Source of the DNA: Sminthopsis crassicaudata
Taxonomy: Eukaryota
Reading direction: 5' to 3'
Length of the DNA stretch: 64,000 nucleotides
NCBI RefSeq assembly: GCF_048593235.1
Contig: NC_133620.1
Location: 373,331,261-373,395,260, forward strand
Below the pieces are notes generated by a model. The model did no database searches. It saw only the letters and a program-made list of their open reading frames with translations, and was not told the origin of the DNA. This document shows, piece after piece, positions 41,600 to 46,200 of the stretch (the stretch's first letter is position 1; each line of letters starts with the position of its first letter). A program made the position numbers and the translations under genes.

Positions 41600-43200
41600 A
41601 ATCTCCTCCCCCTGCAAGATAAAAATTGGCCTTTTTTAGGTCCCTCATCCCGTTAAAACACCCGCACAAAAGCGCTAGCCCCTCACCGTGGGGACTTGGT
41701 GTCTAACCCCAAACCCGTCTCTCCCACTGACCCGCGATTTGTCCACTGCGCCTTCTTCCTGGCTCTACAGTGGCCCTACGGGGGTCCACAGACTTGTAGA
41801 CCCGCTGGGGCAGAGGTTCGAGAAAGGAGACAGTGCCCCACCCCTCACCGGAGCACTTCCGGCCCTGATGGCCTCGTGCTCTACCGACAACAAGCCTCCC
41901 TCTCGAGAGCCTACCAGAGGGACGGCGGACTCTACCAATGAAGCCTTGGGGGAAGGGAGGGGGCGGTGAAAGTCCAGGCCAATGGGCGTAGAGCGGTTGT
42001 GTAGCTGGGGAGAAACGCTGCGTACGGAAGCCGAAACGGGACAGCTCCGAGGGACTCAGAGGAAACCTTGACTGGTGAGGGGGCAAAAGGGCAGGTGAGA
42101 GCGGAAAAATCCAGGCTGGAGAGCTGCAGCGCGGCTCCGGCGGGGTTGGGGGCCCAGCCTGGGAAAGCGCGCTATCGGGCCGGGAGGAGGGGCATCGCGT
42201 GTGCACGCAGGGTCCCGGGACCGGCGAGGAAGGACGCCGGGACTGAACGCCGAAGCGGGGTTTAAAGGGGCGGCGGCTGGCGCGCCTGGGGCTTGGGAAA
42301 GGGGCAGGTGGTGTGGAGAAAGGAGCAAAGGACCGCCATCCCACGGACGGCCCGAGCTCGCCGGAAGAGAGGGTAGGCCTGAGAGTTCGTCCCGTCCACA
42401 CCCGCTTTATTTTGCAGATGGGGAAGCGGAGGCCGGGAGAGTTCAATGATCTGCCCAGGGTCACCCAGTAAGTAAGTAGCGGACCCGAGGCCCGCCCCCC
42501 GGCCGTCAGACTTCCCTCCCGTGGGTTTTGTCTCCTCCGCGCTCCCTCCGCTTCCAGAAGTGCAGCGGCGCCCGGCGCGGTGGGCACGGAGCAGCGGTCC
42601 CGGGTCAGCCCTGGGTCAGCCCTTGGGCCGGCCCGTGCAGTCACCCGGGAGCTCCCGGCCCCTCGCCTCCTCCGGGCGCCCTCCATTCTGGTCTTGTCTC
42701 CCACCAGGCTGGCCGTCTCTCTGGGGCCCTAGCTGCTGATTTTCAGTAGAACTGGCGGGACCCTCATGTTTCCGAGCGCTGTCCCGGGGCCTGGGTGGCT
42801 ACCGCAGGGCCCTGCGAGATCGGAAAGCCTGGACCATGGCCACCCCCAGGAAAACCGTGACGGCCGGCATCATCATGATCGGAGATGAGATCCTCAAGGT
42901 GTGTGTGAGCCCGCGGCCTCCGCGGGTCCTGGGCGCGCCCGACGGGCAGGGGCGTGGCCCCGCTCCCGGCCGCTCCCCTTGGGAATCCGGGGGAGAGGTT
43001 CAGGTTGGTCCGGCTGGGAAAGAGGAGGCGAACTTCCCCTAGTGCCACCCAGTCCCAACTTGCAGGTTCCGTGACACAGACCTCCCGCTGCCGCACTCCT
43101 GCACAACGTGACCGAGCCTTGTGCCAAACGGGTTACCTAACTGGCTCCTGCGCTCCGCTGCGGTTCTGGCTTCTGTGAAACTCCCAGGGCTGGGGGGAGG
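41600..43200 (+). promoter_or_regulatory. FLAD1: FLAD1 CpG-island promoter and non-coding exon 1 (ends 42074)
   Basis: ETS CACTTCCGG ~41855, CCAAT ~41935 and ~41979, donor CTG|GTGAGG at 42075, acceptor TTTTCAG|TAG at 42746. Confidence 0.75.
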
Positions 43201-46200
43201 GGGGCGTTATTCAGCAGACACTGATCCAGCACCGACTCTATGTCCAGGACTGTAGAAGTGCCTTGGAGAATGCAAAGCCGCTCACGGTACATGTGGAGGA
43301 CACTTAAGAAGGAGGGGAAGAAAGGAGGATTTAAGCGTTGGCTATGTGGCGGGCGTTTTGCTGAATGCTAGGGGTACAGGCAAAAGCGAAAACAAAGGTA
43401 GTGCCGCCTTCAGAGAGCTCACATTCCAGTGGCAGCGAGTGCCCAGTGAAAGGCCCAAGGTCAAACTGGCCTCAGACACTAACGGTGTCACCCTGGGCAA
43501 GTCTCTGGGTGCTTTTGCCCCAGCATCTTCAACTGTAAAACAGAAATAGTAATAGCAAACTACCTCCCAAAATATGTGTAAAACTGCTTAGCACGGGGCC
43601 AGGCCCGTAGAAAGGGATAATGTAAATGCTAGTTATTGTTCCCCGGGGGAAACAGCCCACAAAAGGTCGCTAAAGGGACTGAAGATAAAAAGTGAAAGGG
43701 GAGTGAGACTCCTCAAAATAACTGAAGGACAAGACCCTCAGAAGCATCGGGTGAATGAGTGATGCCGTGTAGATGGAGCTACAAGGGGTCCGGCTATTAA
43801 GTAAAGCCGCGCAGAGAAGGCCTTTGAGCTGAGCATTAAATGTCAGAAGCAGAAATGGTGCAGAGGACATTACGGGGGCGGGGACAGCCTGACCGAGGTT
43901 GAATTTGACTTGTGCCTTCTTATTTTCATCAAGCAGTAAGTGGGCTGATTTGGCTGGAATACAGGGTATGTGTAGGCAGCTGGTGTGTAGCAAGGTAGTC
44001 AGGGCACCAAAGGCCACGGTGAGTTTGGATTGCAGGCAGCAGGAAGCCGGGATGGTGATGATCAAAGGGGAGTCCTAGGAGGGCTGGTGTGAGTGTCTGA
44101 TGTGAGACAGGCAGAGGAGAACAGAAGGAAAAAGGCGAGATAAATCCCAGTATATGATAGTACAGGCCAGAGCAAAGGAAATGGCCTGACCCACAATGTT
44201 GGCAGCAGGGACGGAAGAGCATTGTATTAATTGGATTCAGATGTCAGATTTGCCACTAAAAGCTGAGCAACTCAGAATGGACAGGACGTGGCAGCTGTTT
44301 AGAGGTGAAGTATAAGAGAAAGGAAAGTTAGATTTATTCTGAAATAGAAAAATCAGGAGGATAGTCAGGTTCTGGAAGAAATAGAACTTTATTTTGGACC
44401 TAATGTGTTTGTAGCAGTAATTTCAAGTGGAAATGTCTGGAGGGGAATTGAACATATGAAACAAGTTCAAAGGAGTAGTTAGTGGTGGAGATTTAAAAAA
44501 AAAAAAAAAAAGTGAGTCATCTGCTTGGGGGGGGGATAGTTGAAACTATGGGACTAGACAGTCTCACCAAAACAGAGGAGTAAGGGCTAAGTATAGCAGC
44601 CCAGAGCTGGCCGGGTGAGTGACTGACTCTTCCAAATCTTAACCCTAAATGAGTTTCCATTCATTGCCCAGTGTTTGGTCCTTATCTCTCCCTCCAGTCC
44701 TCCTTCCGTCACTCCTCCCTTCTGCCCACCTACCTCTATGGTACTTCCAGAAAGAGGCTCTCTCTCCACAGACGGAGATAGGAAGCCTTCCACATAACTA
44801 AAGATCAGATCTCTTCAACTTCCCTCCCTTGCTTTCCCAGGGCTACACTCAGGACACCAACACCTATTTTCTGTGCCGGACCCTTCGCTCCTTGGGTGTC
44901 CGGGTGTCCCGGATCTCTGTGGTGCCAGACGAAGTGATGACCATTGCAGAAGAGGTGGCTTCCTTCTCCACCCGCTTCAATCTTGTCCTCACTTCTGGCG
45001 GCATTGGACCCACTCATGACGATATCACCTTTGAAGCTGTAGCTCAGGCTTTTGGAGATAAACTCCAGCCCCACCCTGAGTTGGAAGAAGCTGTGAGAGC
45101 CCTGGGGGGCACTGGGCAAGAGAAGCTGGTTCAGGTGCCCTCCACTGCCCGGCTCCACTATGGTACTGACCCTGAGACCGGGGTCCCCTTTCGATTCCCC
45201 CTGGTTTCTGTCCGGAATGTCTACCTCTTCCCGGGCATTCCAGAACTGCAGCAGCGAGTGCTCGGGGGGCTGTCGGATCTGTTCCGGAATGAAGGGATGC
45301 AATTCCACCTTCGTGAATTATATCTGACGGCAGAGGAATCATCGATTGCTCCCATCCTCACAGAAGCACAAGCCCATTTTGGACGCCGACTTGGCATTGG
45401 CTCTTATCCAGACTGGAGTAGCAACTACTATCGTGTTAAAGTGACGCTGGACTCTGACGAGGAGGCGGCAGTTGAGGAAGCCCAGGCTTACCTGAATGCC
45501 CACCTACCCCCCGGATCCCTAGTGCCATTTGTGCCCAATGCAGTGGAGCACGCTAGGGAGGCTGTGTACAGACTAGCCCAGTCAGGTAGGAAGAAGGCTG
45601 CTGGAAGAAAGGAAGTGGCCATCCTTTTCCTTTGGCCATCTCCTGTCTCAGGGGGCAGGGGGAGTGAGAAAAGGAGCCAGTAGATCTTGTGAGAAGAAGG
45701 ATGGTTTGTTCCATCCAAATGATGCTAGTGTGCAGGTGGTGAGGCTGCTACACTGCTCCTGGATACTGCCTCTGGGTTCTAGAAGGCAGCCTCTTGTCAG
45801 GGAACTAGAGAAGAAATGCATGCTTCAAGGTCTGGATTTTGGTTTTCTCTCAGCTCTCAGATTCTGTGTATTCTGCCTAGCCCCTGGGTGGGACCCACTG
45901 GAAGAGGTGTTAAGCTATAGAGAGGCTGGGAAAGTTCTGAGCCCTCCCATTCCCTTCTGATTGTCCTGTGCTCCCGACCCTCCTGGCAGGGACTCCTCTG
46001 GGCAACAAGGTGGAGGGGGCCTTGAAGATTATGGAGGAGGCCCTCTCGAGGTACAAACTGAACCAGCTTTGTGTGGGATTCAACGGAGGCAAGGATTGCA
46101 CTGCCCTCCTACACCTTTTCTATGCTGCTGTACAGAGGTACCCCAACCCTGGGCTGGGCAGTGGCTGGGATGCTCCCCCAGACTCCTGCTTGTGCTCCCT

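What the first reader, a model, noticed from the sequence alone, without database searches (positions are those of the whole stretch)
42747..42835. FLAD1: putative CUG-initiated mitochondrial presequence upstream of the first AUG
Seen in sequence: the frame upstream of the FLAD1 ATG (42836) is open back to the acceptor at 42746 and reads [31 protein letters not shown]. From the CTG at 42752-42754 (context GAA-CTG-G, with G at -3 and +4) this gives 28 residues with 6 Arg, 1 Lys, 1 Asp and no Glu, typical of a mitochondrial presequence. No in-frame AUG exists: unspliced reading hits TGA at 42737-42739, and spliced exon 1 is open only back to TAG at 42002. The CAG/TAG NAGNAG acceptor keeps this frame either way. 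From memory, human FADS isoform 1 has [32 protein letters not shown] here. Inference: amino-acid-level conservation without an AUG suggests a conserved non-AUG route to mitochondrial FAD synthase, which matters for the debated origin of mitochondrial FADS and for FLAD1-related MADD.
Basis: partly seen in the sequence, partly recalled or inferred. Interest (0 to 1): 0.72.

Follow-up and report, generated by a model that had tools for sequence, protein, structure and literature searches.

The report
FLAD1 leader: relic presequence, possible CUG start
The stretch in front of the dunnart FAD-synthase start codon is the leftover of an ancient mitochondrial targeting leader that has lost its own AUG; it could still be made from a conserved CUG codon, but it does not evolve like protein, so this stays an open, testable idea.

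Summary
The window is the FLAD1 locus of the fat-tailed dunnart. The sequence facts hold: open frame 42740-42835, CTG at 42752 with G at -3 and +4, and 6 Arg, 1 Lys, 1 Asp. The splice model is wrong. RNA contigs start this exon at 42708, not 42747, so the in-frame TGA at 42737 is exonic. Opossum and monito del monte gene models splice that ATG in frame to this extension; the observed dunnart splicing makes it a short uORF.

For a CUG start: reptiles, birds, frogs and a ray have a real AUG1 followed by 22-29 Arg-rich codons directly upstream of the same internal Met. All 12 mammals examined lack AUG1 but keep CTGGCG in frame. All length changes are multiples of three.

Against: codon evolution is neutral (omega 0.92-1.03, against 0.06-0.36 in control blocks). 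The leader carries four to five upstream AUGs. No translation data exist.

My estimates are about 0.4 for a low-level CUG-started presequence isoform, about 0.38 for an untranslated relic under nucleotide-level constraint, and about 0.08 for an AUG start through a rare splice. I found no published report of a non-AUG FLAD1 isoform. Earlier notes of this scan do not mention FLAD1.

The parts
41902..42094 (+). Non-coding exon 1 (at least this extent). Donor GGCAG|GTGAG at 42094|42095. Two CCAAT motifs at about 41935 and 41979.
   Evidence: contig record 20 ends exactly at 42094, and there is a joint 42094|42418; the donor is conserved in 7 marsupials.
42418..42471 (+). Alternative 5' exon derived from a MIR-like SINE. 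Acceptor at 42417|42418, donors at 42467|42468 and 42471|42472. uATGs at 42418 and 42446.
   Evidence: joints 42094|42418, 42467|42708 and 42471|42708; the core is repeated elsewhere in the window; homologous to the ATG exon of opossum and monito del monte isoform X1.
42708..42898 (+). First coding exon as seen in RNA: leader 42708-42835, coding part 42836-42898.
   Evidence: contigs and joints start at 42708, and joint 42898|44841 is present in all four runs.
42737..42739 (+). In-frame TGA, exonic. It closes the extension frame five codons upstream of the CTG.
   Evidence: Present in 7 of 8 marsupials (Petaurus has CGA).
42746..42749 (+). Not used in the dunnart contigs. Homologous to the acceptor used by opossum and monito models, and probably by eutherians. 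Both AGs are destroyed in the Tasmanian devil.
42752..42754 (+). Candidate CUG start, G at -3 and +4, followed by GCG.
   Evidence: CTGGCG is invariant and in frame in 12 of 12 mammals.
42752..42835 (+). 28-codon Arg-rich frame between the CTG and the main ATG. Homologue of the AUG1-AUG2 leader of non-mammalian vertebrates.
   Evidence: Rates. Omega.
42766..42888 (+). Out-of-frame uORF (40 codons plus stop) from a weak-context uATG. It overlaps the main ATG.
   Evidence: The uATG is present in 8 of 8 marsupials and in the tenrec, and absent in mouse, panda and platypus.
42836..42838 (+). Main FLAD1 start codon (A at -3, G at +4).
   Evidence: 100% match to the Sminthopsis crassicaudata FAD synthase P0126.
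44841..45585 (+). Second coding exon (MoCF-biosynthesis-like domain).

Best explanation
Window 42752-42835 is the mammalian counterpart of the short Arg-rich leader that non-mammalian vertebrates encode between two in-frame AUGs of FLAD1. There, AUG1 has a weak context and gives a presequence form; AUG2 has a strong context and gives the cytosolic form.

Mammals have no AUG1. In dunnart mRNAs the exon begins at 42708, and an exonic TGA closes the frame five codons upstream. The only entry to this frame is therefore a near-cognate codon.

I take as most likely that a small share of scanning ribosomes starts at the invariant CUG 42752 (G at -3 and +4, next codon GCG). This would add a 28-residue, net +6 leader to FAD synthase. 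Most ribosomes would scan on to the strong AUG at 42836.

Shown here: the homology, the mRNA structure, and the conservation of the CUG and of the frame. Inferred: initiation at the CUG, mitochondrial import, and any physiological role.
For: -: annotated FLAD1 of crocodilian, turtle, tuatara, lizards, birds, frog, caecilian and ray start 22-29 residues upstream of the internal Met. Their leaders have net charge +3 to +6 and at most one acidic residue.
- in alligator both ATGs lie in one exon, 66 nt apart. AUG1 has T at -3 and C at +4.
- the mammalian frame aligns collinearly with these leaders.
- 12 of 12 mammals (8 marsupials, 3 eutherians, platypus) keep CTGGCG in frame with G at -3, and have no in-frame ATG before the first upstream stop.
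- CTG and GCG are the only codons invariant in the 11 species aligned there; the twelfth has them too.
- CTG-to-AUG2 lengths are 81, 84, 87 and 105 nt, all multiples of three.
- only 17% of 87 gap events in marsupial non-coding flanks are multiples of three. The extension has one event (3 nt) against 6.9 expected.
- the first 51 nt evolve as slowly as the coding part (0.25 changes per site, against 0.76-0.93 in introns).
- frame 0 has net charge +3 to +6 in every species; the other two frames average about 0.
- in the observed mRNAs no AUG can feed this frame.
Against: -: substitutions fall evenly on codon positions (10/13/12 in marsupials, 23/32/30 in therians).
- GY94 omega is 1.03, 0.92 and 0.92, not different from 1 (p > 0.7); 28-codon control blocks of exon 3 give omega 0.06-0.36 (p < 0.03).
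- The conservation of the first half may therefore be nucleotide-level: a promoter-proximal element, a leader element or the uATG region.
- The G at -3 is the splice-acceptor G in most species.
- the observed leaders carry uAUGs at 41938, 41982, 42418 and 42446. Two of the resulting uORFs end only 13-20 nt before the CUG, and a further uAUG lies 14 nt after it.
- no special RNA structure downstream (z = -0.26).
- A GC-rich random frame is expected to be Arg-rich anyway.
- No ribosome, peptide or localisation data exist for any species.
Confidence: 0.4

Rival explanations
1. Untranslated relic. After AUG1 was lost in the mammalian stem, the segment became plain 5' leader. Its first half is conserved for nucleotide-level reasons: a promoter-proximal or internal-start element, splice signals of the nearby acceptor, or the uATG/uORF that throttles the main start. 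The open frame, the Arg content and the CTG are inheritance plus GC-richness.
For: - Omega is about 1 and substitutions are even across codon positions, while controls detect constraint.
- The other two frames are also mostly open.
- Eutherian 'amino-acid' similarity continues upstream of the CTG into what is intron and polypyrimidine tract in the spliced form. Nucleotide constraint can therefore mimic protein conservation here.
- In two runs the exon contig ends at 42708 or 42740 with no upstream exon laid. This allows an internal start site, as described for human transcripts lacking exon 1a (PMC4908180).
- The uATG 42766 is conserved in all marsupials.
Against: - The length changes in three lineages are all multiples of three.
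- CTGGCG is the only pair of codons invariant from platypus to placentals.
- Presequence-like charge is kept in frame 0 only.
- True presequences at this locus in birds and reptiles also vary greatly in sequence and length, so omega near 1 does not exclude function.
Confidence: 0.38
2. AUG-started extension through a rare splice. The ATG at 42446 in the MIR-derived exon is joined to 42747 or 42750 instead of 42708. This gives a leader of about 36 residues, as in the NCBI isoform X1 of opossum and monito del monte.
For: - P0135 and P0131 begin with eight residues from the homologous exon, joined in frame to the same extension.
- The dunnart and Antechinus keep the ATG, the phase-1 donor and the AG acceptors (form D, 74).
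- The Tasmanian devil has lost the ATG and both AGs together.
Against: - No contig in four runs joins into 42747 or 42750. All joints from this exon go to 42708, which leads to TGA 42737.
- Wombat, koala, sugar glider and devil lack the ATG yet keep the frame.
- An out-of-frame ATG at 42418 precedes it in the same exon.
Confidence: 0.08
3. Human-type isoform 1: retention of the upstream intron lets an AUG far upstream read through into this segment.
For: This is how human FADS1 is described (PMC4908180).
Against: - In the dunnart the unspliced frame hits TGA 42737 with no ATG.
- In tenrec, mouse, panda, platypus and sugar glider the contiguous frame also closes before any ATG.
Confidence: 0.01

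Closest known systems
AUG1/AUG2 dual start of non-mammalian vertebrate FLAD1 (annotated proteins of alligator, turtle, tuatara, lizards, birds, frog, ray)
   Same: Same gene and same exon. The position is the same, directly upstream of the internal Met-Ala. Length (22-29 against 27-35 codons), net positive charge and scarcity of acidic residues are similar. The alignment is collinear.
   Different: The dunnart and all 12 mammals examined have no AUG1; a CTG lies a few codons upstream of where AUG1 aligns. The mitochondrial role of the non-mammalian leader is itself only inferred from composition.
Human FAD synthase isoform 1 (hFADS1, 97 extra N-terminal residues, mitochondrial when expressed)
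   Same: Its last roughly 30 extra residues are the homologue of this segment. It is the proposed mitochondrial form (PMC4908180, PMC3546728).
   Different: It starts at an AUG reached by retaining intron 1a, and that open frame is absent here (TGA 42737). Its predicted targeting peptide is the first 17 residues, not this segment. The transcript was not found in fibroblast or blood RNA-seq (PMC4908180).
Conserved non-AUG (CUG) N-terminal extensions of mammalian proteins (Ivanov et al. 2011, PMC3105428; Fedorova et al. 2022, PMC9789052)
   Same: An in-frame near-cognate codon in good context, no upstream in-frame AUG, a conserved start codon, and orthologues elsewhere that use AUG.
   Different: The accepted cases mostly show coding-type evolution. 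This one does not (omega about 1). It was outside those screens: the extension is shorter than 50 codons, and in human the region overlaps annotated coding sequence.
Opossum and monito del monte FLAD1 isoform X1 (P0135, P0131)
   Same: The same extension is read in the same frame, and the AUG donor exon is homologous to window 42418-42467.
   Different: They use the downstream acceptor. The dunnart RNA uses 42708, which puts a stop in the way. These are gene models whose RNA support I could not see.

Membership tests
Non-AUG-initiated N-terminal extension | An in-frame near-cognate codon in favourable context, with no stop before the annotated AUG | tested here: met
   CTG 42752 with G at -3 and +4; the frame is open to 42836.
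Non-AUG-initiated N-terminal extension | No in-frame AUG upstream in the real mRNA | tested here: met
   RNA contigs put TGA 42737 in the exon, and no AUG feeds the frame in forms A-C. A rare alternative splice cannot be excluded.
Non-AUG-initiated N-terminal extension | The start codon is conserved across species | tested here: met
   CTGGCG is invariant and in frame in 12 of 12 mammals.
Non-AUG-initiated N-terminal extension | The extension evolves as coding sequence (omega below 1, third-position bias) | tested here: not met
   Omega is 0.92-1.03 with p > 0.7. Changes per codon position are 23/32/30. Controls give omega 0.06-0.36.
Non-AUG-initiated N-terminal extension | The frame is kept through insertions and deletions | tested here: met
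   Lengths are 81, 84, 87 and 105 nt. There is one 3-nt gap against 6.9 events expected, and 17% of flank gaps are multiples of three. Few events, so the weight is modest.
Non-AUG-initiated N-terminal extension | Ribosomes initiate at the codon | not testable with these tools
   No ribosome profiling was accessible.
Mitochondrial presequence | Net positive charge, Arg-rich, almost no acidic residues, 15-50 residues long | tested here: met
   R6, K1, D1, E0 in 28 residues. Net charge is +3 to +6 in all species, in frame 0 only. A GC-rich frame gives part of this by chance.
Mitochondrial presequence | Amphipathic helix or a positive predictor score | tested here: inconclusive
   The maximum helical hydrophobic moment is 0.77, against 0.62-1.03 in non-mammalian leaders and 0.2-0.5 in most other-frame readings (mouse and platypus frame +1 reach 0.69 and 0.75). 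TargetP and MitoFates were not available.
Mitochondrial presequence | Import and cleavage | not testable with these tools
   Needs a reporter or proteomics.
Vertebrate FLAD1 AUG1/AUG2 dual start | An in-frame AUG1 in the same exon, 22-29 codons upstream of AUG2 | tested here: not met
   There is no in-frame ATG. The only ATG in the segment (42766) is out of frame, 70 nt from AUG2 against 66 nt in alligator.
Human-type FADS isoform 1 (intron retention) | An open frame through the retained intron back to an AUG | tested here: not met
   TGA 42737-39 with no ATG.

The most novel reading that the evidence does not exclude
Across all mammals, FLAD1 makes a minor mitochondrial FAD synthase by starting at a conserved CUG. 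This CUG replaced the weak AUG1 of other vertebrates; AUG1 may survive as the frameshifted uATG at 42766. It would explain mitochondrial FAD synthesis in species such as rodents and marsupials that have no annotated AUG-started long isoform.
Probability: 0.3. Interest if true: 0.75.

Novelty: new member of a known kind. Interest (0 to 1): 0.45.

Why it matters
Whether mammalian mitochondria make their own FAD is an old, unsettled question (PMC7432027). The human mitochondrial isoform rests on an intron-retaining transcript that was not seen in fibroblast or blood RNA-seq (PMC4908180). Here that open frame is also absent from the contiguous genomic sequence of five further species.

A conserved CUG start would give every mammal a route to a mitochondrial enzyme from the ordinary mRNA. 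It would also change how variants in the FLAD1 leader are read in multiple acyl-CoA dehydrogenase deficiency.

Even if the CUG is not used, the comparison is informative. It shows that the vertebrate ancestor had a two-AUG gene, and that mammals lost the first AUG. Single lineages then gained new AUG entries: a SINE-derived exon in opossum and monito del monte, and intron retention in human.

Tried and rejected
- **In-frame AUG in exon 1.** None with either donor. The real donor at 42094 gives TGA 42076-78 in frame.
- **Unspliced reading.** Stops at TGA 42737.
- **RNA hairpin after the CUG.** Folding of 42740-42850 is no better than shuffles (z = -0.26).
- **The uORF frame (+2) as the conserved coding frame.** Overall its omega is about 0.7-0.76, no better than frame 0. 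Its second half scores lower (about 0.5, p 0.04-0.08), but its first half is about 1.2 in marsupials. The uATG is missing in mouse, panda and platypus.
- **Frame openness as evidence.** Weak, because the other frames are also mostly open.
- **Word search with the N-terminus of the monito del monte isoform.** Only the opossum was found.
- **Literature.** No paper links FLAD1 with non-AUG initiation or an N-terminal extension of this kind. FLAD1 is absent from the main text of Ivanov 2011 and Kazak 2013, from the text and held supplements of Fedorova 2022, and from the held supplements of the 2024 5'UTR proteomics paper. In the 2025 alternative-start paper it appears only as a Met98 variant.
- **Left undone.** I did not fetch or compare human or other primate DNA. 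The third protein word search and the representative-library search were not used.

Full report
**What is there.** The window carries FLAD1 between CKS1B and LENEP. Its exons match the Sminthopsis crassicaudata FAD synthase P0126 at 100%. The main ATG is at 42836. The frame is open from 42740 to 42835 and closed by TGA 42737-39. CTG 42752 has G at -3 and +4. The 28 codons hold six Arg, one Lys, one Asp and no Glu.

**Transcript structure.** Four public runs behaved as RNA: their contigs carry GT..AG joints. The joints are 42094|42418, 42467|42708, 42471|42708 and 42898|44841.
The in-frame TGA at 42737 is exonic.
- Exon 1 ends at 42094.
It derives from a dispersed SINE core that recurs in the window: 5 matches against 0.67 expected. 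From memory it is a MIR element.
- It carries ATGs at 42418 and 42446.
- In run X6 the two joints from this exon account for about 47 of about 53 depth units entering the coding exon. In run X12 one contig carries it.
- In runs X11 and X16 the coding-exon contig simply ends at 42708 or 42740 and no upstream exon was laid. An internal start site is not excluded. Contigs cannot show rare forms.

NCBI isoform X1 of opossum (P0135) and monito del monte (P0131) starts with eight residues from the homologous SINE exon. These are joined in frame to the same extension through the downstream acceptor.
- The dunnart and Antechinus keep that ATG, the phase-1 donor and the AG acceptors. A 42467|42750 join would give an AUG-started leader (form D).
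- The joins actually seen go to 42708 and turn ATG 42446 into a 16-17-codon uORF.
- The ATG is not general. It is deleted in the Tasmanian devil and the wombat, and it is GTG in the koala and the sugar glider.
- The devil has also lost both AGs of the downstream acceptor.

**Deep homology.** Annotated FLAD1 of alligator, turtle, tuatara, two lizards, many birds, a frog, a caecilian and a ray begins 22-29 residues upstream of the internal Met-Ala. These leaders have net charge +3 to +6 and at most one acidic residue.
- In alligator DNA both ATGs lie in one exon, 66 nt apart. AUG1 has a weak context and AUG2 a strong one. This is the usual arrangement for two products by leaky scanning.
- The mammalian frame aligns collinearly with these leaders.
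- I read the segment as the remnant of an ancestral presequence-coding stretch. I hold this part with about 0.75 confidence.

**Evidence that the frame is still kept.** I examined twelve mammals: eight marsupials, tenrec, a mouse species, panda and platypus.
- None has an in-frame ATG before the first upstream stop in the contiguous sequence.
- All keep CTGGCG in frame with G at -3. These two codons are the only ones invariant in the 11 species aligned; Antechinus, the twelfth, also has them.
- CTG-to-AUG2 lengths are 81, 84, 87 and 105 nt.
- In marsupial non-coding flanks there are 87 gap events in 1064 nt, of which 17% are multiples of three. The 84-nt extension has one event, of 3 nt, against 6.9 expected.
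- The first 51 nt change as slowly as the coding part: 0.25 changes per site, against 0.76-0.93 in introns. The last 33 nt are near neutral at 0.67.
- Net charge is +3 to +6 in frame 0 in every species and about 0 in the other frames.

**Evidence against a protein under selection.**
- Parsimony changes per codon position are 10/13/12 in marsupials and 23/32/30 in therians.
- Synonymous changes are not enriched.
- A GY94 fit gives omega 1.03, 0.92 and 0.92 for marsupials, therians and all mammals, none different from 1.
- Four 28-codon blocks of exon 3 in the same species give omega 0.06-0.36, with significant tests even in marsupials alone. The method has the power, and the extension fails it.
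- The conserved G at -3 is the acceptor G in most species.
- Eutherian 'protein' similarity also runs upstream of the CTG into what is intron in the spliced form. Nucleotide constraint can mimic amino-acid conservation at this place.
- The leaders seen carry four uAUGs before the CUG and one 14 nt after it.
- There is no special structure after the CUG.
- In mitigation, the real leaders of birds and reptiles are themselves very variable in sequence and length. A presequence can function with little positional constraint.

**Literature.**
- Human FADS1 arises by retention of intron 1a and was not detected in fibroblast or blood RNA-seq (PMC4908180).
- Its predicted targeting peptide is the first 17 residues (PMC3546728), not the segment homologous to this one.
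- The mitochondrial location of FADS is called an old debate (PMC7432027).
- I found no report of non-AUG initiation in FLAD1.
- The large screens would have skipped it: Ivanov et al. required 50 codons, and Fedorova et al. excluded leaders that overlap annotated coding exons.

**Verdict.** The splice model and 'no AUG' need correction. My estimates:

| Reading | Probability |
|---|---|
| Low-level CUG start giving a presequence-like leader | about 0.4 |
| Untranslated relic kept by nucleotide-level constraint | about 0.38 |
| AUG start through a rare splice from the SINE exon | about 0.08 |
| Human-type intron retention | excluded |
| Other | remainder |

If the CUG reading is true, it is a new member of a known kind. 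It bears directly on where mitochondrial FAD synthase comes from.

Noticed in passing
window 42418-42471: A SINE (MIR-like) fragment is used as an exon. It has a 'ttttgcag' acceptor and two GTAAGT donors 4 nt apart (42467 and 42471). Both donors are seen in RNA contigs. The choice of donor shifts the frame of the two uORFs that start in the exon.
   Followed up: partly
window 42766-42768, compared with L011:2501-2569: The out-of-frame uATG lies 70 nt before the main ATG; alligator AUG1 lies 66 nt before AUG2. The protein alignment puts AUG1 one codon away from this uATG. The uATG may be the ancestral AUG1, thrown out of frame by a net +1 change in the mammalian stem. This is speculative.
   Followed up: partly
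L005 (Tasmanian devil), homologue of window 42440-42460 and 42744-42749: The devil has lost both the SINE-exon ATG (a deletion of about 20 nt) and both AGs of the downstream acceptor. Antechinus and the dunnart keep both. This looks like joint decay of one splice isoform.
   Followed up: partly
L001:3960-4022 (opossum): In the opossum SINE exon, the first uORF (10 codons) ends in a TGA that overlaps the isoform X1 ATG (ATGA). This layout is typical of termination-reinitiation.
   Followed up: no
window 41935-41941 and 41979-41985: Two CCAAT motifs lie upstream of exon 1; the second is conserved in all seven marsupials aligned. They are probably promoter boxes. Their ATGs count as uAUGs only if transcription starts further upstream, as one contig (41902-42094) suggests.
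   Followed up: no
window 43064-43285 to 44840: Run X11 shows a minor joint 43285|44840. An extra exon inside the large intron is spliced to the second coding exon.
   Followed up: no
window 44802-44840: The frame of the second coding exon stays open 13 codons into the intron. The annotated Antechinus isoform X1 starts in the homologous retained intron sequence. The devil isoform '1-T1' also starts with an alternative sequence before the second coding exon, but one unrelated to this intron stretch.
   Followed up: no
window 42093-42471: In run X12 a single 1316-nt contig runs unspliced from 42093 to 42471 and then joins 42708. So the intron between exon 1 and the SINE exon is either retained, or transcription starts inside it.
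   Followed up: no
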